64,000 bases of DNA, from the NCBI GenBank assembly GCA_038087875.1, contig JAXLNO010005103.1, forward strand, positions 186,001-250,000, written 5' to 3'. This document shows positions 26,565 to 59,601 of this stretch, piece after piece. The notes beneath the pieces are model-generated. The model saw nothing but the letters and a program-made list of their open reading frames with translations. It did no database searches and was not told the origin of the DNA. The first letter of the stretch is position 1. The number at the start of each line of letters is the position of its first letter. The translations under genes and the position numbers were made by a program. The DNA is from Malacoraja senta (Eukaryota).

Positions 26565-26672
26565 CTCTCCTCTTTTTTCTCCACCAAACAATTACTGCCA
26601 AGACAATAGCCATCAATATCAGCACACACACGGCAATAAGGCCTATGTGCCTGTCTTTCTTCCTATTTCCTT
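26565..26672 (-). CDS. Connecting peptide/transmembrane exon of the class I-like gene
   Basis: Not in ORF track; acceptor cttatttttcag, donor G|gtaaga, 108 nt phase 1-1; EGNRKKDRHIGLIAVCVLILMAIVLAVIVWWRKKRR (hydrophobic span followed by a basic stop-transfer). Confidence 0.92.
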
Positions 26673-36743: not shown

Positions 36744-37019
36744 CTTTTCTGGTCAGGTATGTCTTTCCAATTGCATAGTATGTAAGCCATAGATCCACAC
36801 AGTCATGTTCTAACAAGCTCTTGAAATAACGGTTCATTTTTTCATTCTTGTCCCATTTCTCTTTGAAGGGCTCAGCTATTGGATCATGCACCGTCCACTT
36901 TAGCTTGTCCTTATCAAAACTAAATGCATATCTTCCATCAAAAGCCAACTTCAATATCCCTACAGTGGGACTGTGATCGTTCACCTCACAACCAAACTGT
37001 CCTTGAACGTAGTGATAAT
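36744..37019 (-). CDS. MHC class I-like alpha2 exon
   Basis: Acceptor atttttatttcag, donor G|gtgagt, 276 nt; YHYVQGQFGCEV...AFDG...KEKWD...DCVDLWLTYY with the C101-C164 pair. Confidence 0.95.
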
Positions 37020-37169
37020 CTGAAATAAAAATAAAAATCATTATTTGATTAATTGTTATGACTGGGTAATTTCTGGACACCAGGGTCCAAGTCATTTATA
37101 TATGTCACAAGTAGCAAGGGTCACAGCACAGATCCCTGCAGAACTCTACTTGTCACTGAACTACAGCTT

Positions 37170-37630
37170 GAATATTTGGCCTTCCGTACAACTGTAGACA
37201 CCATATTATTGTACGGGTGTGAGGCATGGACTCTCACTCCAGCACTGTCCTAGTCTCTCGATGGTACCTACACCCGAATGCTCGGAAAAGTTCAAAATGT
37301 CAGATGGAGGGACCACATCACCAACGCCCAGCTCTATGGGGAGAATCCACCTCTGACCGAGAAGATCACGTTGAGAAGGATGAGGCTCGCAGGTCACTGG
37401 CTCCGCCACCCAGAAATGCCAGCAAACAAGGTTGTGCTGTGGGAACCCACCCATGGAAGACTTGACCCAGGACGGCCAATCAAGATGATGCTGAAGACGT
37501 TGATGGAAGACGCATGTGTAGAGACAAAAGCTTGCCAGTTGCATGGAGGACAGAGATGTGTGGTGCGTCCGTCACCGTGCCCGTCGGAAACCAGCACGGC
37601 ACTAATGTTTTCAACGATTATTATTATCAT
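37170..37630 (+). mobile_element. RTE-clade LINE 3' fragment
   Basis: ILLYGCEAWTL, RWRDHITNAQLY, RRMRLAGHWLR, GRP; (TTA/TCA)-type tail. Confidence 0.8.
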
Positions 37631-37751
37631 CCACTACACCCCTCTATCCTGGGGATTTATCCACATTTCTCTTCAAGTGATCCAACATCTCCTTCTTGCT
37701 TAACTTCAAAGTGTCCCTGCATGTTAGCATTCTCCACATTGATTCTCCATG

Positions 37752-38550
37752 TGTAAGAAAGAACTGCAGATGCTGCAGATGTTAAAATCGTAGAGAGACA
37801 CAAAATGCTGGCGTAACTCAGCGGGTCAGGGAGCTTCCCTGGAGAGAAGGAATGGGCATCGTTTTGGGTCGAGACCCTTCTTCAGACTGATGTCAGGGGA
37901 GGGACAAAGATAGAATGTGGGCGGAGACAGTAAGACTGGTGGCAGAATTGGGAAGGGGGAGGGGATGGAGAGAGAAATCAAGGGCTATCGAAAGTAATAG
38001 AAGTCAATGTTCATACCGCTGGAGTATAGACTACCCAAGCGAAATATGAGGTGCTGTTCATCCAATTTGGGCTGGGCCTCACTCTGACAATGGAGGAGGC
38101 CCAGGACAGAAAGGTCAGATTGGGAATGGGAGGGGGAGTTGAAGTGCTGAGCCACCGGGAGATCGGGTAGGGTAAGACGGACTGAGGGGAAGTGTTCAAC
38201 AAAACGATCGCCGAGCCTGCGCTTGGTCTCACTGATGTAGAGAAGTTGACAACTGAAACAGCGGATACAGTAGATGAGGTTGGAAGAGGTGCAAGTGAAC
38301 TTCTGCCTCACCTGGAAAGACTTTAGGTCCTTGGACGGAGTCGAGGGGGGGACATAAAGGGACAGGTGTTGCATCTCCTGCAGTTGCAGGAGAAAGTATC
38401 CGGGGAGCGGGTGGTTTGGGTGTGAAGGGACGAGTTGACCAGGGAGTTTCGGAGGGAACGGTCTCTGCGGAAAGCAGAAACGGGTGGAGATGGGAAGATG
38501 TGATCAGTAGTGGGATCCCGTTGGAGGTGGCAAAAATGTTGGAGGATTTT
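37752..38550 (-). mobile_element. Penelope-like element fragment (GIY-YIG endonuclease plus pseudo-LTR)
   Basis: FTCTSSNLIYCIRC...LLYISETKRRLGDRFVEH...VAQHFNS...EQHLIFRLGSL..GMNIDF. Confidence 0.9.
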
Positions 38551-38689
38551 ATGATGTACTTATTATTAATAGTCCTTACTATTCTACATGTCTTCCTTGG
38601 TGAAACCAAACCTCGCCAAACTCCAAGCACATATTCCCTTCTATATCCTTAAGCAATCCACCTTTTGCTGCAATGGTTGCCTCGCCAAA

Positions 38690-39365
38690 AGTCGTCTGTC
38701 CCTTCCTTCTTTGTGTCTGTTTTGTACGTGTTAAATGTATATTCTTTAGTGTTCTTTAGCTTGTTTTGGGGGTGGGGAGGGGGGGGGGTTGGGGGAGTTG
38801 TGGGAAACTTTTCCTAATCTCTTACCTCGACGTAGATGCGATATTTTCTGTATCGTATCTCCGTCCACAATGCGGCCTAACATTGATGAATGGCGGCCTT
38901 TTGCTAGAGATCGACTGGGAGATCCATCGCAGGAGCCTGTGGACTTACCATCATGGAGCTCGCGATCCCTGTCGAGGATCGACTTTAGGGCTCCAACTGT
39001 GAGAGCCTGCAAGACTTTAACATCGCGGAGCCTGTGGTCTACGGTCGAGACCGACATCCGGGATCTCCAAGCCGCAGGAGTTTCGACCGCTCCGACGTGG
39101 GAGTTTCGATTCCCCAACGGGGGGTTTTGACCACCGACTGCAGATTGTTTGACTGCCCCGACCGCGGGAGATAAAGAGGAAGGAGATTAGACTTTATTGC
39201 CTTCTATCACAGTGAGGAACGTGCGGTCTCCTCTGTTGTGGATGTTTATGTTAACTTTTATGTTATTGTGTGTCTTGTTGCTTTTTTTTAGTATGGTGTA
39301 TGGTAGTCTGCATTTCAATGTACCTTAATTGGTATATGTGACAATAAACTAACCATGAAACCTTG
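38690..39365 (+). mobile_element. GC-rich non-autonomous retroelement with Rex-type tail
   Basis: Body shares motifs with 41875-42362 (ggacttaccatc..gagct, tgccttc.acagtga.gaa); ends tgtgacaataaac. Confidence 0.55.
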
Positions 39366-39449
39366 AAAAAGATGTGGGATTTTCTGTAATCCGACTCACT
39401 AAAGCCACTTTGTGGCCTTTATTAACCCCTTTAGTTTTAAGCTTTAGAG

Positions 39450-41290
39450 CAGTGGTTCTTAACCTTTTTGGCCCCACGACCCCATCAGGCATTCTTGATC
39501 AGTACCGTGACCTCTGAAACAAAATTTGAAAAAAAACAGCCCGATTTATTAAAACATGTCTGCCATTGCTCAGTCAATGGGATGGCTGAAATTGCTTCGC
39601 AGTCATCAGGCAATCAAAACGTGGACGAATGCTCGACAGGCAGCACCTCATGTCAGTGTCGATCACAAGCCTATTGCGTACCTTCGTTTTCAGAGTTACC
39701 ATAGTTGAGAATCCACCCTCACAGTGAGAGGTTGAGGGGGAATGGACCAATAGGGTCAGGGCCCTCTTCGAAAGAGCAGGACATTCCTTCACTTTCAGCC
39801 AAAACGTGGCGAGCTCTTGTTCCATGAAGTCACTCTTGAGTTGCGCATCTTCACGAATTCAGTAAAATTCAACCTTCGGTCACGTCAGTATCGCTGATGC
39901 CACCGTCTTCAACGGAAAAGGGTCAGAGCATCCACTCATCACGAGAGCGGTCATCCAGTCTGGGGAAGTAACGTTCGATGGCTTCACTAATTGCCAGAAG
40001 GTGGGTTGAGATCTCCTCGTGGAAGTGGCATTCAGCATCAGGCGTAGCATCCAGGAGAGTCGTCATCTCAGGGAAGATAGCCATGTCACCGTCCTGGACT
40101 GTTCTCTGGTAAAGGTTCCTCCTGAATGCCATTGGGAGGATTCCTTGAAGCGACAGGTTCAAGGAATTCACCTCAGCGAAGAAGTCAGCCAAGTAAGCAA
40201 CCTTCATCACGAACAGTTCAACTTGCATCTTTTCATGAAGCTGATTCTCCTTCTCAGTACCCCTTCTCTCCAAGAACAGCGCTATTTCCACTCGAAGTCG
40301 AATCACATGATTGAGAACTTTACCACGCAAAAGCCAGCGCACCTCTGTGTGGAATAACAGAATAGTGAAATCGGCGCCCATTTCTTCACACATCGCTTGA
40401 AGATTCTTGAGTTTGTTGCACTCTCTCGGATGTGGTTCACAATCTTCACCACATCTGAAAGCACTTCTCGAAGACCAAGAGGGAGAGTCTTCATCGCTAA
40501 AGCATGGCGATGTATCATGCAGTGGGGGAAGGAGACATGTGAAGCGACATCATTCACGAAGTCTTGGAAACCGGATCTGCAACTGACCATGGAAGGTGCC
40601 CCATCTGTACACATCCCGACAAGGCGTTCCCAGCCAAGCTCATGTTTGATGAGGAAGGCTTCCAGCATTCTGAACACATCTTCTCCCCGAGTGGTAGTAG
40701 CCAATGGCTCCGAGAACATGTACACCTCCGTCATGGCTACTCCATCGAGGTAACGAATGTAGACTAGCAGTTGGGAACATGAGGCAACATCTGTTGACTC
40801 GCCCAGTTGCAGTGAATACACTGGACTGCTCTTCACAGCCCTCACTACTTGCAGCAGAATATCATTACTCATATCCGAGATTCCAGCACCAACTTCGCTG
40901 CTTCGAGAAGGCATGGCTTGATAAGCTCTTCACCGATGCTGTGAGGTTTCTTAGTCTGTTCGATTCGATAAGCAATCCGGTATGAAGCCTCTAACGCTGC
41001 TTCATTTTGATGAGCGCAATGACCCGTTGAATAGATGCGGGATCCCTTGAGTTATGGCTTCTTTTCGTTTGAAATAGTCCACGCTCTTCCCCGCCAGGTT
41101 GCTGTGACAAGACTCCAAATGGATCTTCAGTTTGCTGGGCTTCATGCTCTCGTGACTCAAAACCTTGGCACAGAGAACACATTGCGGCTTGACCACGGAT
41201 TTTGAACAATGCTTGTGAAGCCCAACTTGAGAAATGTTTCACTATACGTGCGCGTCTTGGAAGACATGGTTCACAACACACACTGTTTGT
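39450..41290 (-). mobile_element. hAT (Buster/Charlie, ZBED5/SCAND3-like) transposon, decayed, one TIR visible
   Basis: TIR cagtggttcttaacc after ctttagag; BED finger PQCVLC..SMKPSKLKIHL, YSLQLGESTD, CTDGAPSM, HCMIHRHALA, HTEVRWL, dimerisation motif PSTSHCEGGFS; stops and frameshifts. Confidence 0.9.
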
Positions 41291-41874
41291 GTGTGTATAC
41301 GCAGGGCCTGAGAGGAATTTTATCAGTGGGTACCATGCTTTTGGGCCCCCTTCCCTTCTCCATTAGTCATCCTGTTTTTATCCACTATGCTACAGTTTTA
41401 TGCCATGAGCTGTAGCCTGCACGGCAAAAAGGGGTATGGAAGATGAGAGAGGGGTGGAATGGGGCGCTCTGTTGATTTTCTGCATTTGAGGCCTTATGTC
41501 TCTATACACCCTCCATGATAAATATAAATAAATATAAATAACATAAAAGGATCAGAAAGCACATTTGTTTTCCTTCACTCTATACATGCGGCCTCACCCG
41601 TTGAGTTTCTCTAGCATTTTATCTAGCTTTGTTTTGAACATCTTTGTTTATGCTACAATACAGATAAGGAGAAAGAATTCACATTGAAACATCCTTTTAT
41701 GTTTCAATGCAGATCATATCATCAAAAGACATAATTATTAGTAAAAAGTAAAAGATTTACTTTTATTATATAAATTTACTTTATATAAAGAGCTTTCCTG
41801 GCCTTTTTTGTGTGAAAAATGTCAAATCACAGCATGAAAATGTATTGTTCTGGCAATGTATGATTCAATACTAT

Positions 41875-42362
41875 TGATTCAATACGTTGACACCGTGGAG
41901 CTGTGGTCTGCGGAGCTTCTAGCCGCGGGCATGGCGTGGACTTACCATCCGGAGTCTGGGATCCCTTGCCGGGGATCACCAGAGATGAGCTCGAACCGCT
42001 AGCCTGCGGCCTATAACATCCTGAAGCTGCGGTCTCCACTAGGAAAGTGCCGAGTCGGGACCTCCAAGCCGCAGAGTGTGTTTGTCCGTCCCAACGTCAG
42101 AGTTTGGATCATCCCGACGAGAGGGCCTTGTACATCGGTCCGTCCCTAGATGCGACTACGGAGGGGTTATGGCCCCGAACACAGGTGAACAAAGGAGGAG
42201 GACTGGCTGAAACTTGTTGCCTTCCACAGTGAAGAATGCTGTAGTGGATGTTTGTGTTCAATTTTATTGTGTATTGTGTGTTCTTTTTACGTGTATCACT
42301 GCTGGCAAATTCACTTCACTGCACCTTCGGGTGTATGTGATGAATAAAACTGACTTTGAATA
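41875..42362 (+). mobile_element. Related GC-rich non-autonomous retroelement
   Basis: Same internal motifs as 38690-39365; ends tgtgatgaataaaactgactttga. Confidence 0.55.
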
Positions 42363-42887
42363 CTTAGCCTGGCCAAATCCACAAGACATTCATGAGACAA
42401 TGTCGACCTTAAATAATTCTTAATCAGCTTGAGTTTGCTAAATGACCTCTGCAGAAGCTACTGTTGCTGGAATTGTTTTTTTTTTTTTTTTTAATTTTTA
42501 TTTATTAGAAGTACATTACATTACAACCACATACATTAATACTCGTCATTTATATCTTCTTACAATTAATGTACTCCCTTTATTTATTTTTTTACACTAG
42601 AGAAAGAAAAGATTGAAAGAGAGAAGAAAGTGAAGGAAAAAGTGCAAGTGTAGAAAAGTGTAGAAAATGTAACAACAAAAAAGGACGCAGACCCTATAAG
42701 AGCGAAATTAAAAACAAAAAGAAAAAGAGTTAAGAAATAGGCCCTAAGAAAAGAAAAGAGAAAGAGAAAAAAAGAGAAACAAATGTTTTTTTTTTGAGCA
42801 TCACGTAAATAGGACATACCAACTCTTCAACTATCATCCCCCCTTACCCGACCTCAATTTTTTATTTTTTTAAAGTACTTTTGCACC

Positions 42888-45800
42888 CTATGTTTGTAAT
42901 AATTCTATAAATGCAGACCACGTCAGGTGGAAGTGATCTGGTTTACCTGCTAGGAGGAGTCTTATCTCTTCAAGGTGTAATGTTTCAAACATATTTGAAA
43001 TCCACATATTTATAGTTGGTATTGGAGCCTTCTTCCAAAATTTTAGAATTAGCTTTTTTCCAGTTATTAACCCATAATCCATTAATTTCTTTTGAAACAC
43101 ATTTAGTTCTGGATCATCTTCCGTTATTCCAAAGATAATCCATTCTGCTTTGGGTATCAGTCTTGTTTTAAATAACTTTGTAAAGATTTCAAAAATTTCA
43201 TTCCAAAATTTTTGAATTTTTGTACAGAAGACAAATGAGTGCGCTATAGTTGCTTCTTGGGATTGACATTTATCACAAATAGATGATACGTTTGGGAAAA
43301 TTTTATGAATTTTAGTTTTCGAATAATATAATCTATGTAAAATTTTAAATTGTATTAAAGTGTGTCTTACATTAATCGAGCATTTATGCACTTTTAATAA
43401 GTATTCATTCCAACTTTCCTTTGAAATTTTAATAGCTAACTCTTGTTCCCAGTCTCTTCTGATACCCTCCGTAGATGGTATTTGTGCATTTAAGATAATA
43501 TTGTACAAATATGATATTAAGTTTGCTGATTCCGCTTTTATCTGCATTGCCTCGTCCAGTACATCTGCTGGGTTATTATGATGATCTTTTATATATTTTT
43601 TCAAATAGTCGCATATTTGAAAGTATTTAAAATATTGATTATTTCCGAGTTTATATTTTATTTGTAATTGTTGAAATGAAAGTAATTTTCCAGTTTCATA
43701 CAAGTCACCAAGCGTTTTAATTCCTAGTCTATCCCATTGTGTATAAGCTTTATCTATAATAGAAGGACTAAACGAAGGGTTATTGACTATAGGTAATAAA
43801 AGTGATAAGTTTCTTAATTTTAAATTTTGTTTTATTTGTTTCCAAATACGGATTGTACTATGAATAATTGGGTTCTTATTATAGTTTATGTTATTCAATT
43901 TCATTGGAGAGAGGAGGATCGCTCCAATGTTTCTAGAGGAGCAATCCTCTTTCTCCATTACAATCCAGTCTACTTGCTGGGCGGAGTTATCCATCAGTTG
44001 AATCATGTTTTTAATATTTACTGACCAATAATAATACATAAAATTAGGTAGTGCTAGACCCCCCAATACTTTAGATTTATTCAGATGGGTTTTTTGTATT
44101 CTATGTGATTTATAGTCCCATATAAAATCAGTGATATCTGAGTCGAGTTTTTTGAAAAACTTCTTAGGTAAGTATATAGGAATTGATTGAAATAGGTATA
44201 AAATTTGTGGTAAAAAGATCATTTTTATTGCGTTTATTCGGCCTATTAAAGACATCGGAAGCGTTTTCCAGAATTTAATTAATGTATTCAGTTTATTAAG
44301 TAGGGGGTCAAAATTTGCCCTGAGCATACCTTGATATGCTCTGGTAATTTCGATTCCCAAATATTTAAATTTTTCTGTAGCTATTTTGAAAGGGAATTTT
44401 AAAAGATGTGTTGAATCTTTCGGTTTTATTGACATAATTTCACTTTTATTCCAATTTATTCTATATCCAGAAAAAGATCCGAAGTCTTCAATTAAATTTA
44501 ATATATTTGGTATAGTGATTTGAGGTTTTGTAATATACAATAATATATCATCCGCGTATAAAGATATTTTATTATATGAGTCTTTAGTATTATATCCATG
44601 AATATCAGGGTGTATTCTAATTTTTTCTGCTAGCGGTTCAATAATGAGAGCAAACAGCTGTGGTGATAATGAGCATCCTTGTCTATTTCCCCTTGATAGT
44701 TGAAATTTCGAGGATAATATGTTATTAGTAAGTATTCTAGCTGTAGGTTTGTTATATAGTAACTTAATCCATAAAATAAAATTCTCTCCCAGTTGAAATT
44801 TTTGTAATACTTTATCCATATAATTCCATTCTACTTGATCAAATGCTTTTTCAGCATCCAGCGAAATAATTGATAATTCTTGATCTTCAGATTTGTGTGA
44901 GTGCATTATGTTGAGTAGACGTCTCATATTATTAGAAGAGTATCTCTTAGGGATAAACCCTGTCTGATCTGGGTTTATTAATTTACTAATGTATTTACTT
45001 AATCTTCTGGCTAATGTTTTCGCTAATATTTTTTGATCTGTGTTTAACAATGCTATAGCTCTATATGAGCCAGGTTCTTCTAAATCCTTATTTTTCTTAG
45101 GTATTAATGTAATCGTTGATTCCGCTAATGTATCAGGTAGTATTCGTTTTTTAAAAGCGTATTGGTACATTTTTTGTAATCTTGGTATTATTTTATCATA
45201 AAAGCTTTTATAAAATTCATTAGTAAATCCATCAGGGCCTGGTGTTTTTGCATTTTTTAGTGAGTTTATTGTATCTTCTAATTCCTTAATTGAGATTTGT
45301 GCACCCAGTTCCTCTTGTTCCTTCAGCTCTAACTTTGGAAGATTACAGGTATCCAAGAACTTTGTGATATTATTGGAATCAATTATCGTTTTAGATGTAT
45401 ACAAATTCTCGTAAAATTGCGCAAATCTTTTATTAATATCCTTCGGTGTTGTTAATAATTCCCCTTTATCTGATTTGATCTTTGGTATAGTATGTTCCTT
45501 TTCTCGTTTTTTTAGCTGACGAGCCAAAAGTTTATGCGGTTTATCCCCAAATTCAAAGTGCTCTTGTTTTGTAATTTGAAAAAGTCTTATAAGTTTGGCA
45601 GATAATAATTTATTTAATTTAAATTTTAAAATTATTATTTTATTATGTTTATCTATTGATGGATCTTTAGCATTATCTATATCCATTTGTCTAATAAGTT
45701 CTTCTAACTGTCTTTGTTCATTCTTATTCTTTTTATTTTGAAAAGCTTGATATGAAATTATAATACCCCTAATGTATGCTTTAAAAGATTCCCAAAGTAG

Positions 45801-46674
45801 GCGATATATCTGAAGTATCATTTGTTTGAAAAAAGACCTCCATTTGTTCTTTTAAATATATACTCGCTTGTGGATCTTTTAAAATTTGAGAGTTAAATCT
45901 CCAGAATGAATTATTCTTAGACAATCCTTCCAGTTTTAAAAAGAAAGTTAGTGGAGAATGGTCTGAAATTGAATTTGTATGGTATATTGCATTAGATGTT
46001 TGGGGGATTAATTTTGTATCCAGCAGAAAGTAGTCTATACGTGAGTATGTCTTATGTACCATTGAGTAAAACGAATATTCCCTGCCAGTTGGATTCACAA
46101 TTCTCCAAACATCTGCTATATTAGTGTTATTTATGTAGGTATTGAGGAGTTCCCCAGTTTTCGATTTCATATTCCCTCTCTGTTTTTGACTTGATTTATC
46201 TAAGTACGGATCTAAAACAGAGTTAAAGTCTCCGCCTATTATAACATTTTGATAGTTTGACTCTGCAATTATATTGAAGATTTTATTGAAAAAGTGGGGG
46301 TTATCAAAGTTAGGGGCATATATATTTACCAAAGTAAATGGAGTGTCATGGATTTCTCCATTAACTATTAGGTATCTCCCTTCTATATCTGTTATAATAT
46401 TCTTTGCTTTAAATGGTATACCTTTTCTTATGATAATTGACGTGCCTCTAGATTTTGAAGTGAATGAAGAGTGGTATGTTTGACCTATCCATTTCGCCCT
46501 CAGCCTAACTTGGTCCTGAGGTTTTAGGTGTGTTTCTTGTAGGAAGGTAATGTCAGAATTATACATTTTTAGCTGAGCTAATATCTTACCCCTTTTGATA
46601 GGTTCGTTAATACCTCTTATATTCCAACTACAAAATGAGATTCCTCCTAGGTTCTTTTGTGTGGTGTCATGCAT
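42888..46674 (-). pseudogene. L1 ORF2p (APE endonuclease, RT, CCHC) with one frameshift near 45800
   Basis: SWNIRG, LQETH, GGDFN, SRIDY, SDH; KTPGPDGF, LDAEKAFD, RQGCSLSP, YADD; CDKC...HSFVFC. Confidence 0.93.
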
Positions 46675-49272: not shown

Positions 49273-49806
49273 GCTGGTTCCTAGTGCTCCCCCCCCCCCC
49301 CTCCTGCAGGGAAGACCCATCAGTATTGATGACTCTGCTGTGTCCTAGTGCTCTCCCCCTACTCCTGCAGGGAAGACCCATCAGTAGTCATGACTCTGCT
49401 GGGTCCTAGTGCTCTCCCCCCTCCTGCAGGGAAGACCCATCAGTAGTGATGACTGCTGGGTCCTAGTGCTCCCCCCCCGCCCCCCCACACGGAAGACCCA
49501 TCAGTAGTGATGACTCTGCTGGGTCCTAGTGCTCTCCCTCCTCCTACAGGGAGGATCCATCAGTAGTGATGACTCTGCTGGGTCCTAGTGCTCTCCCTCC
49601 TCCTACAGGGAGGATCCATCAGTAGTGATGACTCTGCTGGGTCCTAGTGCTCTCCCTCCTCCTACAGGGAGGATCCATCAGTAGTGATGACTCTGTTGGG
49701 TCCTAGTGCTCCCCCCCACCTACACGGAAGACCCATCAGTAGTGATGACTCTGCTGGGTCCTAGTGCTCTCCCTCCTCCTACAGGGAGGATCCATCAGTA
49801 GTGATG
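49273..49806. repeat. Minisatellite, about 9 copies of a 59-60 bp unit
   Basis: Unit ctcct(a/g)caggga(a/g)ga(c/t)ccatcagtagtgatgactctgctgggtcctagtgctctccc; ccatcagta recurs nine times at about 59-60 bp spacing. Confidence 0.95.
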
Positions 49807-50823
49807 GGTCTTCCCCTTCCCTCTCTTTTAATCAGGTTACCCCGACCACACATCCGCTTGTGAAAATTCCCTGCTTTATTATGGATCACAATTTCTACGA
49901 ATTACGATATATAAAACTCTGAAGGCACAAAATGTGAATGCTAGTCTTCACAAAATATATGCAAAAATTTTCTGAGATTTCAGGAAATTCCCGCCCCCCC
50001 CCCCTTCCTTCAGCTCCCGGGCCCCTTTTGGACTCCGAGCCCGGGTACGATGTACCCCCTGCACCCCCCTCTCATAGGCCCCGTGTATACGTACGCGCAT
50101 ACGTGAACAAAAAACTGTGTGTGGTATGTACCTTTGTTAGGTTCCTAAAAATGGGCTCAACAAATTGATGTTCTTTACAACCCCTTCATGACCCCCGGAA
50201 AATCCCAAACGACCCCCTTGGGGGTCACGACCCCCCCACTGCTTTGGAGATACAGTGCTGAAACAGGCCCTTCAGCCCATACTAGGGACAATTTACATTT
50301 ACACCAAGCCAATTTACCTACATCTCAGAGAAAAGCCACACAGGTTACGGGGAGAACATGCAAACTCCATGCAGTCACCACTCGTAGTCAGGTTCAAACC
50401 AGGGTCTCTGGTGCTGCAAGGCAGCAACTCGTGTAAGGCCATGATCTCTTGGCTTTGCTTATAGTTATTATCATGTTTTATCTTCTATTGTGTTCTTTTT
50501 GCTTATTGCATATAAACAAATGTAAAGCTGCACATAAGGTTGGATCTTTTCGAGGCCCGAGCTGCCCCATCTATTACCACAAAAGTGCTTCCTATATTTA
50601 GAGAAACATAGATATAATAAGGCTCACCCCTCATGGGCATTGAAGGCTTTCTCTAAAATATGGAGACCATTAAGCTGTTCACTGCCAAGTTTATTTTTCA
50701 CTATTGGCCATGACCCCTAGTGTACTCGGCGGTGGCATTGAACAGGTTAAAGATATCCAGTGATTGAACAGGCTAAAGATATCCAGTGATGTGTAGCTGC
50801 GCTACCTTTCCTTGATATTTTTA

Positions 50824-51505
50824 AGGGCCTGTCCCACTTACGTGTCCTTGGCACACAAATTATGCGACCTCGTGGTCGCGTTGAGGCGCACGGGCATCGT
50901 ATGGCCGCGCAGGGCCGGTCCCACTTGGAAGCGCGGAGGAGTATGTAGTTGTGCGCGACATCGTGCGGGGCTCCGATAATTTTGTAGTGAACGGAATCTT
51001 CGCGTGCCAACGGCCTGTCGCGGAACTGACGGCCAAAGTGGGACAGGCCCAAGACCCTGGCGCGACGCAACGTCTCACTTTCAACAGCAGCAGAAGCAGG
51101 CAAACGATCGCCGAACTCGGCCTGGGGCTCACGGCCGTTGAGGTCCGGATCCGCCCCCACTTCTACTCCCAGAGCGGGGCCAAGAAAATTGAAGATAGAC
51201 ACAAAATGCAGGAGTAACTCAGCGGGACCGGCAGCATCTCTGGAGAGAAGCAATGGGTGACGTTTCGGGTCAAGACCCTTCTTTTCAGACTGAAGAAGAG
51301 TCTCGACATGAAACGTCACCCATTGCTTCTCTCCAGAGATGCTGCCGGTCCCACTGACTTACTCCAGCTTTGTGTCCATCTTCAAATAATGTCACACGCT
51401 CCAGACGGCTGTACGTACGCATGTAATCGCTCCCGACCTTCGTCAGACCATCGCGGCTCAACGTGTAATTTGCGTTCCCAGGACACGTAAGTGGGACAGG
51501 CCCCT
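50824..51505. mobile_element. Harbinger-type MITE carrying a nested palindromic Penelope-derived repeat
   Basis: TIRs agggcctgtcccacttacgtgtcc / ggacacgtaagtgggacaggcccct flanked by TTA. Confidence 0.85.
51191..51383. repeat. About 190-bp palindromic (fold-back) Penelope-derived repeat
   Basis: Two head-to-head arms; 51224-51266 is the perfect reverse complement of 51310-51352; related half or full copies near 3570, 9110, 25070, 26750, 27260, 30930, 32120, 55990, 58920, 60270, 60740, 61900, 63830. Confidence 0.88.
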
Positions 51506-52294
51506 TTACTTAGATGATTCATTCCCTCTGGCATTGATTGATGAATCAAAGTGGGGGGGGGGGGGGGGGGTTGATGGAATTTGTAAGGATTTGCTGAAGT
51601 CAGTTTGCTTAAAACTGCTCACTCCTTGAAAAGGAGAGTCTGTGAACTTTAGCCCAGAGACAAAGAACAGTTTGTGAACTCAAGGTTATAATTGATAAAA
51701 ATCTAGGCACAACTGTGAACAACAACCCTTTATTAGGATGAAGGTAATGAGCTAATGCCAACCATGCCCCTGGGACCAGGAGTAATAAGGAAGGGTCAAA
51801 ACTTGGATGATGTTTTCATTCCAATAAGAAACTCTACAAACAATGATAGCTGAATAAAACATAATTATGTTGTATCGATGAAGAGCCTCCTTTTCAAGCT
51901 GTTTTCTGCAGTCTTTTAGTTGTTCTGCAGATCCTTTACATTCTCTCGTCTTCGTGTTTTCAAGAAACACCACAAATAGCCGAATGTATACTAATTATAG
52001 AAACATAGAAAAATAGGCACAGGAGTAGGCCATTCGGCCATTCGAGCCAGCACCGCCATTCAATATGATCATGCCTGCATCTAGAATCAGTACCCCATTC
52101 CTGCTTTTAGAAACATAGACACACAGAAAATAGGTGCAGGAGTAGGCCATTCGGCCCTTCGAGCCTGCACCGCCATTCAATATGATCATGGCTGACCATC
52201 CAACTCAGTATCCTGTACCTCCCTTCTCTCCATACCCCCTGATCCCTTTAGCCACAAGGGCCACATCTAAATCCCTCTTAAATATAGCCAATGA

Positions 52295-53996
52295 TGTCTC
52301 TTATAGGCTGAATAAATGCTATAAAAATGATCTTTTTACCACAAATTTTATATCTATTCCAGTCAATACTTACCCAAAATGTTTTTTAAAAAATTGGATG
52401 CTGATATTATAAATTTTATATGGGACTATAAATCCCACAGAATCCAAAGAAAACATTTGTGTAAACCTAAGGAATTTGGTGGATTATCACTCCCCAATTT
52501 TTTATATTATTACTGGGACACAAATGTCAAAAATATGATTCACCTTTTGGACAATTCGGCCCAGCAGGTGGATTGGATAGTAATGGAGAGAGAGGACTGC
52601 TCCCCTTTTAACATAGGAGCGATCCTTCTCTCACCAACAAAAATAAAGAATACAATATATAGTAAAAATCCAATTATTCACAGTACAATTAGAATTTGGA
52701 AACAAATAAAATTATTGTTAAAATTAAGAAATCTATCACTTCTTTCACCTATAATGAATAATCCTTCGTTTAAACCTTCTATGATAGATAGAGCTTTTAT
52801 AAATTGGGAAAGAGCAGGAATTAAAACGTTTGGAGATATGTATGATAACGGAAGTTTTTTAACATTTCACCAATTACAACTTAAATATAACTTGAATAAT
52901 AATCAATATTTTAAATATTTCCAACTACGTGACTATTTGAAAAAGTATACACGGGAATATCAAAATATCTCTCCTGACTTATTAGATGGGATAATGAATA
53001 TAAAAGCGGAATCAGCTAATTTAATATCATACCTATATAATTCCATTTTAAATATAGAAATTCCATCATCGGACGGGATCAGAAGAGAATGGAAACAGGA
53101 ACTAGCTATAAAAATCTCGAAAGAGAGTTGGGATAAACATCTATTATATGTGCATAAATGTTCGATTAACGTAAGACATACTCTGATTCAATTTAAAATT
53201 TTACATAGATTATATTATTCAAAAGCTAAATTAAGTAAATTTTACCCAAATACCTCTGCAAACTGTGATAAATGCCTAGTACAAGAATCAACTATAGCAC
53301 ATTCTTTTGTTTTTTGTATAAAAGCTCAAAAATTTTGGAATGAAATTTTTGAAATTTTCACTAAATTATTTTAAATAAAACTGAAACCGAATGCAGAACT
53401 GATTATTTTTTGAACAATAGAAGCAAGTTTGGAGCTGACTTCGTTTCAAAGGAGTTTTCTTAGTTATGGCTTAATAACGGCAAAAAAATTAATACTGAAA
53501 TTTTGGAAAAATGCTCCTACGCCAACAATAAAAATGTGGACTTCTAATATGTCGGAATTGTTACATCTAGAAGATATGAGATTCCTCCTAGCAGGTAAAC
53601 AAGACCAATTCCAAAAGATTTGGTCTCCATATATTGACTTATTACAAACATAAGGTGCAACAAAATGATGATAATAAATGGTTTTAAGTCCTGGCGAGGG
53701 GTGAGTAAAGATAAGAAGTAGGTGCATCCCTTTCATATTGTCCTATCTTATTTTCTTTTTTCTCTTTTTTTCTTTTCTTCTTTAACTATTTCTTGTGGTT
53801 TAGGTTCACATGTGTGTTCCTGGGCCACTTTTTCATTCACTCACTGACTGTCCTTGCTAGTTCTTTCTATTATTCTTTTCTATTAAAGTTGAAAAACAGA
53901 AGTGGTACAAGAACTGTATAAATTTACGTTATTGCAGATTACTGTAATGTAAAATACTTCTAAAAAAAAATTTTTAAATTAAAAAATAAAAAATAT
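52295..53996 (+). mobile_element. 5'-truncated L1 nested inside a CR1
   Basis: TSD atatagccaatga (52282-52294, 53997-54009); ORF2 C-terminal region closely similar to the 42888-45821 protein. Confidence 0.9.
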
Positions 53997-54426
53997 ATAT
54001 AGCCAATGAACTGGCCTCAACTACATTCTGTGGCAGAGAATTCCAGAGATTCACCACTCTCTGTGTAAAAAATGTTTTTCTCATCTCAGTCCTGAAAGAT
54101 TTCCCCTTTATCCTTAAACTGTGACCCCTTGTTCTGGACTTCCCCAACATCGGGAACAATCTTCCTGCATCTAGCCTGTCCAACCCCTTAAGAATTTTGT
54201 AAGTTTCTATAAGATCCCCCCTCAATCTTCTAAATTCTAGCGAGTACAAGCCGAGTCTATCCAGTCTTTCTTCATATGAAAGTCCTGACATCCCAGGAAC
54301 CAGTCTGGTGAACCTTCTCTGTACTCCCTCTATGGCAAGAATGTCCTTCCTCAGATTAGGAGACCAAAACTGTAGACAATACTCCAGGTGTGGTCTCACC
54401 AAGACCCTGAACAACTGCAGTAGAAC

Positions 54427-54524
54427 TGCAGTCTGAAGAAGGGTTTCGGCCCGAAACGTTGCCTATTTCCTTCGCTCCATAGATGCTGCTGCACCCGCTG
54501 AGTTTCTCCAGCAATTTTGTGTAC
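54427..54524 (+). mobile_element. 98-bp Penelope pseudo-LTR-derived insertion with hammerhead-like core
   Basis: 12-bp TSD ctgcagtagaac (54415-54426, 54525-54536) inside the CR1; begins tgcagtCTGAAGAAGGGTTTCGGCCCGAAACGTT. Confidence 0.88.
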
Positions 54525-56699
54525 CTGCAGTAGAACCTCCCTGCTCCTATACTCAAATCCTTTTGCTATGAATGCTAACATACCATTCGCTTTCTTCACT
54601 GCCTGCTGAACCTGCATGCCTACTTTCAATGACTGGTGTACCATGACACCCAGGTCTCGTTGCATCTCCCCTTTTCCTAATCGGCCACCATTCAGGTAAT
54701 AGTCTACTTTCCTGTTTTTGCCACCAAAGTGGACACATTTATCCACATTATACTGCACCTGCCTTGCATTTGCCCACTCACCCAGCCTATCCAAGTCACC
54801 TTGCAGCCTCCTAGCACCCTCCTCACAGCTAACACTGCCCCCCAGCTTCGTGTCATCCGCAAACTTGGAGATGTTGCATTCGATTCCCTCGTCCAAATCA
54901 TTAATATATATTGTAAATAGCTGGGGTCCCAGCACTGAGCCTTGCGGTGCCCCACTAGTCACTGACTGCCATTCTGAAAAGGACGCGTTTACTCCTACTC
55001 TTTGCTTCCTGTCTGCCAGCCAGTTCTCTATCCACATCAATACTGAACCCCCATAACCGTGTGCTTTAAGTTTGTATATTAATCTCTAATGTGGGACCTT
55101 GTCGAAAGTCTTCTGAAAGTCCAGATATAACACATCCACTGGTTCTCCCTCTACTAGTTACATCCTCGAAAAATTCTATAAGATTCGTCAGACATGATTT
55201 ACCTTTCATAAATCCATGCTGACTTTGTCCAATGATTTCACCATTTTCCTAATGTGCTGCTATCCCATCTTTAATAACTGACTCTAGCAGTTTCCCCACT
55301 ACTGATGTTAGACTAACTGGCCTGTAATCCCCGTTTTCTCTCTCCCTCCCTTTTTAAAAAGCGGGGTTACATTAGCTACCCTCCAATCCTCAGGAACTAC
55401 TCCAGAATCTAAAGAGTTTTGAAAAATTATCACTAATGCATCCACTATTTCTGGGGCTACTTCCTTAAGTACTCTGGGATGCAACCTAACTGGCCCTGGG
55501 GATTTATCGGCCTTTAATCCATTCAATTTACCTAACACCACTTCCCGGCTACCTGGATTTCACTCAGTTCCTCCATCTCATTTGACCCCCGGTCCCCTGC
55601 TATTTCCGGCAGTTAATTAAGTCTTCCTTAGTGAAGACAGAACCAAAGTAGTTATTCAATTGGTCTGCCATGTCCTTGTTCTCCATGATCAATTCACCTG
55701 TTTCTGAGTGCAAGGGACCTACATTTGTTTTAACTAATCTTTTCCCCCATATCCCTTGATTCCTTTAGCCTTAAGAGCTAAATCTAACTCTCTCTTGAAA
55801 GTACGTTGTTTAGATAAGAGCCTTCTTTTCAAGCTTCTTTCTGCGGTCTTTTAGTTGAGTTTTGCAGGTGCTTTAGTTTGTCTCGTCTTCTCTCTGCTGA
55901 ATATGTAACAACTACAAGCTGTGAATAACAAAAAATCCTTGAAAACTAACACTGGACTGCGAGTGTGAGTACAAAGCATGTTCTAACGTGACCCAACTTC
56001 AGTCTGAAGTAGGATCCGCACCCGAAATATCTGCCTTCCCATGTTCTCCAAAGATGCCGCTTGACCCGTTGAGTTCCTCAGCACTTTGTGTCTGGAGGAA
56101 AGCAGCCTCTGCTCTTCCTTTCATCTACAATTGTTAAATAGTTCAATCCAGCCAATTAGTTCAATTTTACATTGTTGACTAAAATGAGAAAGAAGGCAAT
56201 TCAAGGATAAATAACTGCCCATAATTCCATGTGACAGAGAAAGAGGTCTTTCAGCCTCCTGAGCCCACTCAGGAGGCTGAGGGGTGATCATATAGGGGTG
56301 CTTAAAATCATGAGGGGAATTGACAGAGTGTATGCCCAGAGCCTTTTACCCAGAGAACAAAATTATTCCAACACTAATTTGCCCCAAAACGGATCTTCCT
56401 CATTTCTATCAATGCCACAAATCCACCTCTATTTGCAGCGGTGGCTTAATCTACTAATTCAGCACATTTTGGTATGTGGGAGGAAACTGGAGAACAAACA
56501 TTGTCACAGGGAGAATGCTTATACTCCACACAGACTGCACTGGAGATGATTGAACCTGGATCACTGGAGCTGTGAGGCAGCAGCGCTCTTTGCTATAAAG
56601 CAGTCATAGAGAGTCACACAGCAGGGAAACAAGCCCTTTGGCCCAACTTGTCCATGCTAATCAAGATACCCCATTTAAGCTAGTCCCATTTACCCTGGA

Positions 56700-57200
56700 A
56701 TCGGTAGACATCATTCAAAACGTTTCTCTCTAGATGTCAGCTGCTCTACATCGGTGAGACCAAGCGCAGGCTTGGCGATCGTTTCGCCAAACGCCTCCGC
56801 TCGGTTCGCAACAACCAACCTCATCTCCCTGTGGATCAGCACTTCAACTCCCCCCTCCCATTCCAAATCCGACCTTTCTACCCTCGGCCTCCTCCATGGC
56901 CAGAGTGAGGACCGCCGTAAATTGGAGGAGCAGCACCTCATTTTTCGCTTGGGCAGTTTACACCCCAGCGGTATGAACATTGACCTCTAATTTCAGGTAG
57001 TCCCTACTTTCTCCTCCCCTTCTCAGCTCTCCCTCAGCCCACTGACTCCACCTCTTCCTTTCTTCTTCCTGCCCCCCCCCCCCATTCCCCCCACCCTCAC
57101 ATCAGTCTGAAGAAGGGTTTTCGGCCCTAAACGTTGCCTATTTCCTTCGCTCCAGAGATGCTGCCTCACCCGCTGAGTTTCTCCAGCATTTTTATCTACC
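56700..57200 (+). mobile_element. Penelope-like element 3' fragment (GIY-YIG plus pseudo-LTR)
   Basis: LYIGETKRRLGDRFA...HFNSPSHS...EEQHLIFRLGSLHPSGMNID followed by the ctgaagaaggg repeat. Confidence 0.9.
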
Positions 57201-58244
57201 TATGCATGTCCCTGTCCATGTGTCTATTAAATATTGTTATTGTACCTGCCGCAACTCCATTCTCTGGCAGGTCATTCCATATGCTGACCACTCTCTGAGC
57301 ACAAAGATTGTCCCAAGTTCCAATTAAATCTTCCCCCTCTCACATTAAACCCATGTCCTCTGGTTATTTTATTCTCCTTCTCTGGGTAAAAGGCTCTGGG
57401 CATACAGTCTATCAATTCCCCTCATGATTTTAAGCACCCCTATATGATCACCCCTCAGCCTCCTGTGCTCCATGGAATAAAGCCCTGGCTTGCCCAATCT
57501 CTCCCTCTTGTTCACACCCTTGAGCCCCGACAATATGCTCATAAATCTCATAAACATAACAATGTTGCAGATAATATGTGCACCATAAATAATGCAAATA
57601 TAAAAAATATTTTTGAAGGCAATATGATTCAATAAACATGGTTCAATGAATCAGATGATAATCTAATAAATGTCATTCACATGTATTCACATATAATTTG
57701 AAAATAATAATAAATATTGCAAGATGTGGAAAATTGATAGAAATTATGCCCAGTGCATAATATTTTGATGTATTGTTCCCTGTTTGTACCCTCACCCTGT
57801 TTTAGTTCAGTTAAAGATTAATAATATAATTTGTTTAATGTGTAACCGAAGAGGTAACAAAAAGCAATGTTTTCAGAAATAATTAATCATGAATGAATAA
57901 CACTTTATTATGACATGTGACAAGTCACAGTGAAAGTCTTTGTTTTGTAAACCCAACGTATGTCAAGATTCTTCACATAAAGGGCACCGACAAAGTTATA
58001 AAATCTCCCACACCAGGTCCTCCTTTGTCCCCCCCCCCCCCCCCCACCTCACCATGGTTCCCCCACGTCTAGTCCTGCTTTGTTCAATGGTACACTACGA
58101 ATGTCATTGAATTAACACAGTAATGGTGATAGGACTTATTGATTTACAATATAAAACATGTCCAATTTCAACTTATATGGATATACAAGTGTGGTGCAGA
58201 TGGATTTGGACAGCTTACTTTACAATTGGTGCCCAAGATAATTT

Positions 58245-58460
58245 AGAGATATAGCACAAAAACAGCCCTTAGAGTCCACAGTGACCAGTGATCCCCTTTG
58301 GCATACAGGCTTGGAGTGTGGGAGGAAACCGGAGCATCCGGGGAAATCCCACGCAGGTCACGGGGAGTACGTACAAACTATGTACAGACAGCACCTGAGG
58401 CCAGGATCAACCCTGGGTCTCTGGCACTACGGCAGCAACACTACGGCTGAACCACAATGC
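58245..58460 (-). mobile_element. V-SINE (similar minus copies at about 50245-50435, 56430-56595, 59095-59270)
   Basis: Reverse-complement V-domain gtgggaggaaaccggagcatccgggga. Confidence 0.8.
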
Positions 58461-59340
58461 CATTTAGGTTATCCTTTAAATATTTCACACAACATTTCAT
58501 TCAAAATTTGTCAATAAAAGTAAAAACAATTGGTGAGGTACGCAAGGGATTTTAACCATTCAAAAAGCCACCAACATTTTAATGATTTGTAAAATGCTGG
58601 AACACACAGCAGGTTCAACAGAACCTATGGAAAGAGAAACAAAATTAATGCTTCAGAATTGTGAGAATGTGTAAGTTACAGACAGGAGTGGGAGGCATGG
58701 TTGGACATAGGGAGTATCACTAATAAGGTAATGACAGGTTTCCATGGTGATAAACTGACAATGAAGCCATCAGACAATGGCATTTTTGGTTTTTATTTCA
58801 CATTTGCAGCATCTGCAGTTCTTAGGTTAGTGACTCAGCATGGAAACGGGCCATTCGGCCCACCAATTCCATGCCAACCATCGATCATCTTTCACACTAG
58901 TTCTATGTTATCCCAAAATGGACACAAAATGCTGGAGTAAGTCAGGGGAGACACTCTGTGTGAGGAAGGGTCTTGACCTGAAAAGTCATCCATTCCTTGT
59001 ATCCAGAGATGCTGCCTGTCCCGCTGAGTTACTCCAGCACATTGTGCCTATCTTTGCTGTAAACCAGCATCTTCAGTTCCTTCCTACACATCTATGTAAT
59101 CCCACTTTCTCACCCATTCTCAGCACACAAGAGTAATTTACAGAGCCCAATTAACCTACAAACTCTCACGTTTTCAAGATATGGGACGAAACCGGAGCAC
59201 CTGGAGGAAATATCTGTGTTCACAGGGAGAACGTGTAGTCAGGATCAAACCTGGGTCTCTGGCACAGCGAGAAATTTCTTTGAGGTGTTTTTTTATGAAC
59301 ATTGATCACACTCCAAATGTATTGAAATGAATGAACTAAC

Positions 59341-59601
59341 TTGCTGTTTCGTTCTGCCTCCGCATCCATTCATCGACTTGCCCTTTGATGATTCCATGGA
59401 AACCAGTTTCAGAGACCGTATTTGTTACCCAGTAATTCCTGTCAAATGCAGCCGCCATCCATTTCTGTCTTGGAACTGTAATTACCATGTTTTTGTCATA
59501 ATACTGTATCTCACAACCGTCCAGTACACCCACGACACTATATTCTGGTAGATGAGTACTCCCGTGGTTCAGGGTGTAGTAATAGATCAGTGTGTGAGGC
59601 C
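59341..59601 (-). CDS. MHC class I-like alpha1 exon
   Basis: Acceptor ttctttgtttctag, donor A|gttagt, 261 nt; GPHTLIYYYT...LPEYSVVGVLDG...NYW...MRRQNET with Y7, Y59/W60, R84 and the N86 glycosylation sequon. Confidence 0.95.

What the first reader, a model, noticed from the sequence alone, without database searches (positions are those of the whole stretch)
36744..59601. Non-classical, hydrophobic ligand groove suggesting lipid or lipopeptide presentation
Seen (numbering by eye): Y7, Y59, R84, K146, W147 and Y171 are kept, but T143 is F, Y159 is L, W167 is L and Y123 is A. Groove-facing positions are mostly apolar (L5, V24, F70, I73, I74, W81, V95, G97, F99, L114, L116, M152, F156). Established: classical class I keeps the full anchor set, whereas CD1 and some non-classical lineages replace it with hydrophobic residues; several non-classical class I lineages are described in cartilaginous fish. 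Inference: a specialised-ligand presenter, with G97 opening a floor cavity and W81/F143 filling the F pocket. Together with the YQNI tail this is the best candidate for a little-described antigen-presentation system here. I cannot assign it to a named lineage.
Basis: partly seen in the sequence, partly recalled or inferred. Interest (0 to 1): 0.8.

Follow-up and report, generated by a model that had tools for sequence, protein, structure and literature searches.

The report
Skate copy of shark UGA gene
This is a skate copy of UGA, a shark and ray relative of the molecules that show antigens to T cells; UGA is already named and reported to bind fats, and this copy has lost one structural cysteine.

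Summary
They belong to one five-exon gene that continues with alpha3 (29617-29351), a membrane-anchor exon (26672-26565) and a tail exon (15770-15730, DYQNIQPKQNVHC). The leader exon lies beyond the window.

All three outer-domain exons match one solved structure far better than any other. That structure is PDB 9CH4, "shark nonclassical MHC class I, UGA". In a tree the gene sits inside the UGA clade (support 100), beside two skate orthologues. It lies apart from a classical-like shark sequence.

The apolar groove residues are conserved across 12 shark and ray orthologues, and so is a Tyr-x-x-Ile/Val tail. A 2025 review, citing a personal communication, calls UGA and UFA CD1-like lipid binders.

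By sequence and fold the gene is closer to classical class I and MR1 than to CD1.

One new point: this copy has Trp (TGG) in place of the second alpha3 cysteine, which is Cys in 47 of 47 homologues checked. It may be a defective copy.

The scan has already found UGA copies on other pieces of this genome.

The parts
59341..59601 (-). Alpha1 exon (261 nt, phase 1), encoding (G)PHTLIYYYTLNHG...WMRRQNETA
   Evidence: AG acceptor and GT donor. No Pfam hit on its own. Matches 9CH4_A residues 3-86 at E=7e-38. 87% identical to Leucoraja erinacea P0001.
37020..59340 (-). Intron between alpha1 and alpha2, 22.3 kb, swollen by mobile elements. It holds a sense-strand LINE with endonuclease ORF 45781-46674, reverse transcriptase ORF 42888-45821 and an ORF1-like ORF 47480-48550.
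   Evidence: ORF list. Pfam Exo_endo_phos 6e-18 and RVT_1 9e-40. The same intron is 4.3 kb in Rhinoraja longicauda.
36744..37019 (-). Alpha2 exon (276 nt, phase 1), encoding (N)YHYVQGQFGCEV...GKTYLTRK
   Evidence: Splice sites. Pfam MHC_I 2e-13. Matches 9CH4_A residues 90-179 at E=4e-35.
29351..29617 (-). Alpha3 exon (267 nt, C1-set Ig domain). The codon at 29399-29397 is TGG (Trp), where every homologue has the second Ig cysteine.
   Evidence: Pfam C1-set 2e-17. Matches 9CH4_A residues 182-268 at E=1e-33, which reads 'QYACH' against the window's 'QYSWH'. TGG here, TGT in Rhinoraja. Cys in 47 of 47 homologues.
26565..26672 (-). Connecting-peptide and transmembrane exon (108 nt, phase 1): EGNRKKDRHIGLIAVCVLILMAIVLAVIVWWRKKRR
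   Evidence: Hydrophobicity scan, sequence, splice sites. Matches the membrane-anchor segment of P0001 and P0151.
15730..15770 (-). Last coding exon, DYQNIQPKQNVHC plus stop, carrying the Tyr-x-x-Ile motif YQNI
   Evidence: AG acceptor, phase-compatible with the transmembrane exon. 10 of 13 residues match the Rhinoraja tail DYQTIQPNQNMRC. 90% DNA identity to L001 41023-41063.
15673..15678 (-). AATAAA polyadenylation-type signal, about 50 nt after the stop codon
   Evidence: Read directly from the sequence. Its use as a signal is inferred.

Best explanation
The finding covers the two groove-forming exons of a skate member of the elasmobranch UGA lineage. UGA is a non-classical MHC class I heavy chain.

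Shown here:
- A five-exon, phase-1 gene model spanning more than 44 kb. The leader exon lies outside the window.
- Orthology to the solved shark UGA structure.
- Lineage-wide conservation of an apolar groove signature and of a Tyr-x-x-Ile/Val tail.

Inferred mechanism:
- The heavy chain pairs with beta2-microglobulin through its C1-set alpha3 domain.
- The short tail (RKKRR-D-YQNI) engages adaptor complexes and routes the molecule through endosomes, as the same motif does in human CD1B.
- There the hydrophobic groove loads a lipid-like ligand. Small G97 and A123 lie on the floor; bulky W81 and F143 lie at the F end; L159 and L167 replace Y159 and W167 at the A end.
- The loaded molecule is shown to T cells.

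This particular copy has Trp in place of the second alpha3 cysteine. It may therefore fold or pair poorly, and it may be a defective paralogue or allele.
For: - Alpha1, alpha2 and alpha3 hit PDB 9CH4_A in order at E 7e-38, 4e-35 and 1e-33. The next hits are at 1e-9 to 1e-12 for alpha1 and alpha2, and 2e-26 for alpha3.
- An AF2 model of the Rhinoraja orthologue (91% identical to the window protein, pLDDT 93) aligns to 9CH4_A at Z 31.1, rmsd 1.6 over 268 residues. The entry title is 'Crystal structure of shark nonclassical MHC CLASS I, UGA'.
- In the ML tree the window sits in the UGA clade (SH-aLRT 100), with skates (100) and batoids (99). Its end branch is 0.028.
- Gene model: canonical AG/GT at every junction and 317 aa without a stop.
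- dN/dS against Rhinoraja is 0.14 in alpha1 and 0.20 in alpha2.
- The groove signature is conserved in 9-12 of 12 orthologues. Apolar residues fill 0.58 of 31 groove positions, against 0.42-0.48 in classical-like sequences.
- The tail motif is kept in nine of the twelve orthologue models: Y[QE][NTS]I in five batoids and YN[AV][VI] in three sharks; the other three models lack it and end early or read on into intron.
- Human CD1B, CD1C and CD1D tails carry YQNI, YQDI and YQGV (PMC5002281).
- UFA and UGA are reported as CD1-like lipid binders (PMC12562908; UFA in PMC10751288).
- Contigs of a probable RNA run lie on the alpha3 and transmembrane exons but not on unique intron. One contig runs 28 letters past the alpha3 acceptor.
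Against: - Lipid binding rests on a review's personal communication, not on data I could read or test.
- By sequence and fold the nearest neighbours are classical class I, MR1, ZAG and chicken YF1. CD1 is absent from the top 50 PDB rows and the top 30 Swiss-Prot rows.
- Six of the eight classical peptide-terminus residues are kept in this copy.
- The hydrophobicity excess over classical sequences is moderate.
- C259W is unique among 47 homologues, and alpha3 shows dN/dS near 1.
- The leader exon is not in the window.
- The RNA-like contigs differ from the window at 29580 and 26613, so they may come from another copy or allele.
- Scan notes report further UGA copies in this genome, one of them frameshifted.
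Confidence: 0.78

Rival explanations
1. This copy is a pseudogene or null allele of UGA. The lineage is functional, but this locus no longer makes a working heavy chain, because the alpha3 disulfide is lost (C259W).
For: - Trp (TGG) replaces a cysteine that is invariant in 47 of 47 homologues.
- dN/dS in alpha3 is about 1.0, and the transmembrane and tail exons show dN 0.08 with dS 0.
- The window has private differences from all four sequencing runs at 29580, and from three of them at 26613.
- Scan notes report several UGA copies in this genome, one with a 2-base frameshift (s1-140082).
- A truncated class I remnant lies just downstream.
Against: - All five exons are open, with canonical splice sites.
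- The terminal branch is very short, 0.028.
- Alpha1 and alpha2 are under purifying selection.
- The alpha3 and transmembrane-tail rates rest on very few changes.
- Some Ig domains fold without the disulfide.
- The base call could not be checked, because the read table was truncated.
Confidence: 0.4
2. UGA presents acylated amino acids or lipopeptides, as chicken YF1*7.1 does, rather than CD1d-type glycolipids or phospholipids. The retained K146, W147, Y7, Y59 and Y171 would hold a polar head group or carboxylate while the acyl chain sits in the apolar groove.
For: - Five of the eight terminus-binding residues are conserved across the lineage: Y7, Y59, K146, W147, Y171.
- YF1*7.1 structures with N-myristoylated or N-palmitoylated ligands are among the structural neighbours, at Z 26.3-26.7.
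- The fold is class I-like rather than CD1-like.
Against: - The review reports lipids comparable to those of human CD1d.
- R84 is not conserved in the lineage.
- F143 and W81 probably obstruct the classical carboxylate site (inference).
- No ligand data were available to me.
Confidence: 0.15
3. UGA is a specialised peptide presenter, like HLA-E or Qa-1, that binds a narrow set of hydrophobic peptides.
For: - Six of the eight anchor residues are present in this copy.
- The closest solved folds other than UGA are peptide-binding class I molecules.
Against: - T143F and Y159L are fixed across the lineage, and R84 is variable.
- G97, A123, W81, F99, L116 and L167 reshape the floor and both ends of the groove.
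- An endosomal Tyr motif is typical of CD1 and class II routing, not of peptide class I.
- The review reports lipids.
Confidence: 0.07

Closest known systems
Shark UGA (PDB 9CH4, 'Crystal structure of shark nonclassical MHC CLASS I, UGA', released 2026-03-18)
   Same: - Same lineage.
- About 60% identity over alpha1-alpha3, by my count from the alignments.
- Exons match in order.
- Same groove signature: Y7, Y59, F70, I73, I74, W81, G97, F99, L114, F143, K146, W147, M152, F156, L159, L167, Y171.
- The model of the skate orthologue superposes at rmsd 1.6.
   Different: - The window is a skate copy.
- It has W in place of the second alpha3 cysteine.
- It differs at some groove-edge positions: V95 against L, L116 against F, A123 against I, W168 against L.
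- Its batoid tail is Y-Q-N-I plus eight residues, whereas shark orthologues end in YNAV or YNVI.
Human CD1B, CD1C and CD1D
   Same: - Proposed function: a hydrophobic groove for lipids.
- A short cytoplasmic tail with a Tyr-x-x-hydrophobic motif. YQNI is letter for letter the CD1B motif (PMC5002281).
- Pairing with beta2-microglobulin through a C1-set alpha3 domain (inferred here).
   Different: - No detectable closer kinship. CD1 is absent from the top 50 PDB and top 30 Swiss-Prot structural neighbours.
- UGA keeps Y7, Y59, K146, W147 and Y171 of classical class I.
- Orthology to CD1 is unresolved, as PMC10751288 says for UFA.
Elasmobranch clade B (Leucoraja erinacea XP_055486430.1, P0006, and relatives), possibly the UFA lineage
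   Same: - Sister clade of UGA (SH-aLRT 96).
- Shares G97, A123, M152, Y155, F156, L159, D163 and Y171, and has an even more apolar groove (0.66).
- Lies on the same chromosome or contig as UGA in Pristis, Mobula, Heptranchias, Stegostoma and Mustelus.
- One of its alpha3 exons lies 12 kb downstream in this window.
   Different: - About 40% identity to the window gene.
- F7, H59, C99, L143 and R146.
- A longer tail without the Tyr motif in P0006.
- The name UFA is my inference, not shown.
Chicken YF1*7.1 (PDB 3P73, 9EB2-9EB6)
   Same: - A class I-fold molecule with a narrow hydrophobic groove that presents acylated ligands.
- A structural neighbour at Z about 26.5.
   Different: - About 31% identity.
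- A bird-specific lineage.
- Different groove residues.
Classical class I (shark UAA, PDB 6LUP; classical-like P0194)
   Same: - Same domain and exon architecture.
- The N-glycan site NET after alpha1.
- Y7, Y59, R84, K146, W147 and Y171 in this copy.
   Different: - About 33% identity.
- T143F, Y159L, W167L and Y123A.
- A separate clade in the tree.
- An endosomal tail motif.

Membership tests
Elasmobranch UGA lineage (non-classical MHC class I) | Closest relative among solved or named sequences is UGA, by a wide margin | tested here: met
   9CH4_A is the best hit for all three exons, at 1e-33 to 1e-38. The next hits are at 1e-9 to 1e-12 for alpha1 and alpha2, and 2e-26 for alpha3. The entry title names UGA.
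Elasmobranch UGA lineage (non-classical MHC class I) | Forms one clade with shark and ray orthologues of 9CH4 | tested here: met
   The ML tree of 63 sequences gives the UGA clade with the window at SH-aLRT 100, nested with skates at 100.
Elasmobranch UGA lineage (non-classical MHC class I) | Lineage groove signature (F70, I73, I74, W81, G97, F99, L114, F143, M152, F156, L159, L167, W168) | tested here: met
   All are present in the window, and each is in 9-12 of 12 orthologues.
Elasmobranch UGA lineage (non-classical MHC class I) | Short cytoplasmic tail with a Tyr-x-x-Ile/Val motif | tested here: met
   The window has RKKRR-DYQNIQPKQNVHC. Nine of the twelve orthologue models carry YQTI, YENI, YESI, YNAV or YNVI; three lack it and end early or read on into intron.
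Elasmobranch UGA lineage (non-classical MHC class I) | Intact alpha3 C1-set domain with its two cysteines | tested here: not met
   The first cysteine is present. The second is Trp (TGG, 29399-29397), while 47 of 47 homologues have Cys. This bears on whether the copy works, not on its descent.
Elasmobranch UGA lineage (non-classical MHC class I) | Binds lipids | not testable with these tools
   Only a statement in PMC12562908, citing a personal communication.
Elasmobranch UGA lineage (non-classical MHC class I) | MHC-linked and single or low copy | not testable with these tools
   The window holds no MHC framework genes. Scan notes list several UGA-like copies on other pieces of this genome, which I could not inspect.
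CD1 family | Sequence or fold closer to CD1 than to other class I-like families | tested here: not met
   There is no CD1 chain among the top 50 PDB rows (Z 26-31) or the top 30 Swiss-Prot rows. Those rows are classical class I, MR1, ZAG, HFE and YF1.
CD1 family | Tyrosine-based endosomal sorting motif in a short tail | tested here: met
   YQNI is identical to the human CD1B motif (PMC5002281). Whether it sorts the protein was not tested.
CD1 family | Deep, almost wholly hydrophobic pockets | tested here: inconclusive
   The apolar fraction at 31 groove positions is 0.58, against 0.42-0.48 in classical-like sequences. Pocket depth could not be measured without coordinates.
Classical MHC class I (UAA) | All eight peptide-terminus residues (Y7, Y59, Y/R84, T143, K146, W147, Y159, Y171) | tested here: not met
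   Six of eight are present. T143 is F and Y159 is L, and both changes are fixed in the lineage. R84 is variable in the lineage.
Classical MHC class I (UAA) | Clusters with classical sequences | tested here: not met
   The classical-like P0194 groups with bony-vertebrate class I, away from the UGA plus clade B group.

The most novel reading that the evidence does not exclude
This skate carries an expanded and partly decaying set of UGA genes, rather than the single or low-copy gene described for sharks. Within that set, this copy's C259W would be a tolerated change giving a disulfide-less alpha3 domain with altered beta2-microglobulin or co-receptor pairing. Separately, because Y7, Y59, K146, W147 and Y171 are conserved across the lineage, UGA's natural ligands could be acylated amino acids or lipopeptides of the YF1*7.1 type rather than CD1d-type lipids.
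Probability: 0.15. Interest if true: 0.6.

Novelty: new member of a known kind. Interest (0 to 1): 0.35.

Why it matters
UGA, with UFA, is reported as a lipid-presenting class I lineage in the oldest living jawed vertebrates. If that holds, CD1-type antigen presentation would be about as old as peptide presentation.

This window adds a batoid member with a full gene model. It shows that the apolar groove signature and the tyrosine tail motif are conserved from skates to sharks. It also flags a copy-specific loss of a structural cysteine.

It does not open a new system. The lineage has a name, a deposited structure and a reported ligand class, and the scan has already met UGA copies elsewhere in this genome.

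Tried and rejected
- Leader exon: scans of 59602-64000 for a signal-peptide exon gave only weak candidates (61592-61499, poor donor). A search with orthologue leaders found nothing. In Rhinoraja the leader lies 15 kb upstream of alpha1, so here it is most likely beyond the window end.
- Trp codon: the single read-laying run was meant to check the Trp codon and the alpha3-to-transmembrane splice. The stretch is full of repeats, the difference table was cut at the best-supported rows, and none covered 29397-29399. The base call stays unverified.
- Second gene: I looked for a second full class I gene and found only an alpha3 exon at 3167-3439. No matching alpha1, alpha2 or transmembrane exon is in the window.
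- Primary paper: searches for the paper on 9CH4 or on UFA/UGA found none in the held library. The supplements of PMC10751288 do not label UFA or UGA genes.
- Hydrophobicity control: a comparison against a large elasmobranch clade was uninformative, because that clade is itself non-classical-looking (V7, W97, M114, W152). I replaced it with classical-like P0194 and sturgeon sequences.
- Classical class I as an explanation: rejected on anchor residues and tree position.
- CD1 orthologue as an explanation: rejected on sequence and fold neighbours.
- Mosaic of unrelated exon fragments: rejected, because the five exons match one protein in order and share phase.


Full report
**What is in the sequence**

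The window is vertebrate DNA rich in mobile elements. Earlier notes of this scan call the organism a skate. The two coordinates of the finding are exon boundaries on the minus strand.
- The alpha1 exon runs 59601-59341. It follows "tttctag" and is followed by "gttagt".
- The alpha2 exon runs 37019-36744. It follows "tttcag" and is followed by "gtgagt".
- Alpha2 alone reaches Pfam MHC_I at 2e-13. Alpha1 alone hits no Pfam family.

**The rest of the gene**

Three further minus-strand exons complete the gene.
- Alpha3 is a C1-set exon at 29617-29351 (Pfam 2e-17).
- A connecting-peptide and transmembrane exon lies at 26672-26565.
- A 41-nt last coding exon lies at 15770-15730. It encodes DYQNIQPKQNVHC plus a stop, and an AATAAA follows at 15678-15673.

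All junctions are AG/GT and all exons are in phase 1. Joined, they give 317 residues without a stop.

The leader exon is not in the window. In the Rhinoraja longicauda orthologue it lies 15 kb upstream of alpha1, which here would be beyond position 64000.

The alpha1-alpha2 intron is 22.3 kb here against 4.3 kb in Rhinoraja. It contains a sense-strand LINE with endonuclease and reverse transcriptase ORFs.

I mapped the HLA-style numbers onto the mature protein: offset +2 late in alpha1, +3 and +4 in alpha2, and +3 after a one-residue insertion. Every claim holds.
- Kept: Y7, Y59, R84, K146, W147, Y171.
- Changed: T143 to F, Y159 to L, W167 to L, Y123 to A.
- The listed apolar positions are all as stated.

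Ungapped HMMER alignments to classical chains give the same register: 6LUP for alpha1, 7CPO and 5H5Z for alpha2.

**Which lineage**

Each ectodomain exon has the same best hit in the Protein Data Bank, 9CH4 chain A, and the hits are in order.
- Alpha1 matches residues 3-86 at 7e-38.
- Alpha2 matches residues 90-179 at 4e-35.
- Alpha3 matches residues 182-268 at 1e-33.
- The next hits (classical class I, MR1) are at 1e-9 to 1e-12 for alpha1 and alpha2, and 2e-26 for alpha3.
- By my count from those alignments, identity to 9CH4 is about 60%.

A HMMER scan of 1.8 billion representatives with alpha1 found only three clusters above 60% identity. Below them the identity drops to 44% or less.

A word-indexed search returned orthologues from these species:
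- Leucoraja erinacea
- Rhinoraja longicauda
- Pristis pectinata
- Mobula birostris
- Hemitrygon akajei
- Heptranchias perlo
- Pristiophorus japonicus
- Heterodontus francisci
- Stegostoma tigrinum
- Mustelus asterias

The window protein is 91.2% identical to the Rhinoraja protein and 87.7% identical to the Leucoraja protein.

The model has pLDDT 93. It aligns to 9CH4_A at Z 31.1 and rmsd 1.6 over 268 residues. The entry title is "Crystal structure of shark nonclassical MHC CLASS I, UGA", released 2026-03-18.

In a maximum-likelihood tree of 63 sequences:
- the window lies inside the UGA clade (SH-aLRT 100);
- it groups with the two skates (100), within batoids (99);
- its end branch is short, 0.028;
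- UGA is sister (96) to a second elasmobranch-wide clade represented by L. erinacea XP_055486430.1;
- both clades are separate from a classical-like sequence, P0194, which carries all eight anchor residues.

It is not met.

**What is known about UGA**

- Verissimo et al. 2023 (PMC10751288) mention UFA as an unpublished CD1-like lineage in the class Ib cluster.
[quoted passage not shown] It says crystal structure and mass spectrometry suggest they bind lipids comparable to those of human CD1d, citing a personal communication.
- I found no primary paper in the held library.

I did not test it.

**Lineage-wide features**

Across 12 orthologues the groove signature is conserved in 9-12 sequences per position. 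The positions are L5, Y7, Y9, Y59, F70, I73, I74, W81, G97, F99, L114, F143, K146, W147, M152, Y155, F156, L159, D163, L167, W168 and Y171.

R84 is not conserved: Q in six, R in two, E in two and K in two.

Apolar residues fill 0.58 of 31 groove positions in the window and 0.59 on average in UGA. The sister clade has 0.66, and classical-like shark and sturgeon sequences have 0.42-0.48. The excess is real but moderate.

The tail motif is conserved where the orthologue models reach the tail: YQTI, YENI or YESI in five batoid models and YNAV or YNVI in three shark models. The other three models lack it. Two appear to read on past the transmembrane exon, and one ends early. Human CD1B, CD1C and CD1D carry YQNI, YQDI and YQGV (PMC5002281).

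By fold and sequence UGA is not close to CD1. The top structural neighbours after 9CH4 are chicken, duck and fish classical class I, chicken YF1*7.1 and MR1 at Z 26-28. The Swiss-Prot neighbours are chicken BF, MR1, ZAG, HFE and classical class I. No CD1 appears in the rows shown. "CD1-like" therefore describes how it may work, not its descent.

**State of this copy**

Against Rhinoraja, dN/dS is 0.14 in alpha1 and 0.20 in alpha2. That indicates constraint on the groove domains.

The second cysteine of the alpha3 Ig domain is Trp here: TGG at 29399-29397 against TGT in Rhinoraja. The position is Cys in all 47 homologues I tabulated. Alpha3 as a whole shows dN/dS near 1, on few changes.

I could not verify the base with reads.

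Contigs of one probable RNA run (X1) lie on the alpha3 and transmembrane exons and not on unique intron. One contig continues 28 letters beyond the alpha3 acceptor, as spliced RNA would. However, X1 and other runs differ from the window at 29580 and at 26613, where they read Leu and the window reads Met, as in Rhinoraja. They may therefore derive from another copy or allele.

Scan notes list further UGA-like genes on other pieces of this genome. One was judged frameshifted by an earlier agent, and another agent also reached the name UGA. I put the chance that this copy is non-functional at about 0.4.

**Verdict**

- The lineage is UGA and is already known, so this is a new member of a known kind.
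- The pocket-level claims (G97 cavity, W81/F143 plug) remain inference.
- The new point is the copy-specific C259W change.

Noticed in passing
window 3167-3439 (-), with flank 65-3963: An intact phase-1 alpha3 exon of the sister lineage (88% identical to L. erinacea XP_055486430.1, possibly UFA) lies 12 kb downstream of the UGA stop. Window 3963-65 runs parallel to the L. erinacea gene from just before alpha3 into the next intron. No matching alpha1 or alpha2 exon exists anywhere in the window, so this looks like a truncated gene remnant. Its transmembrane exon would fall beyond the window start.
   Followed up: partly
window 42888-48550 (-): A LINE sits in the sense orientation inside the alpha1-alpha2 intron. 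It has an ORF1-like 356-aa ORF, a 297-aa endonuclease ORF and a 977-aa reverse transcriptase ORF. The last two overlap by 41 nt in different frames, so ORF2 is split. A partial copy of the same element's C-terminal part lies at 52379-53653 on the plus strand.
   Followed up: partly
window 4427-8089 (-): A block of retroelement ORFs includes a tyrosine-recombinase-type ORF (Phage_integrase, 1e-5) and so looks DIRS-like. It lies between the UGA 3' flank and the orphan alpha3 exon, at about the place where similarity to the L. erinacea sister gene stops.
   Followed up: partly
window 29580 and 26613: The window differs from all four sequencing runs laid on it at 29580 (synonymous, alpha3). It differs from three of them at 26613 (Met here, Leu in the runs and in Rhinoraja, in the transmembrane helix). 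These are private changes of this copy or individual, in addition to C259W.
   Followed up: no
L. erinacea proteins P0001 and P0153; Pristiophorus P0002: Public gene models of UGA orthologues appear to be misjoined. P0001 seems to read through the transmembrane-exon donor into intron. P0153 fuses UGA alpha1-alpha2 to a 7TM receptor domain. P0002 has a repetitive 170-aa N-terminal extension.
   Followed up: no
window 16000-10037 versus L001 40797-47876: The region downstream of the UGA tail exon runs parallel (82-88% identity) to the Rhinoraja longicauda downstream flank. The UGA 3' neighbourhood in the window is therefore probably genuine and not a misassembly.
   Followed up: partly
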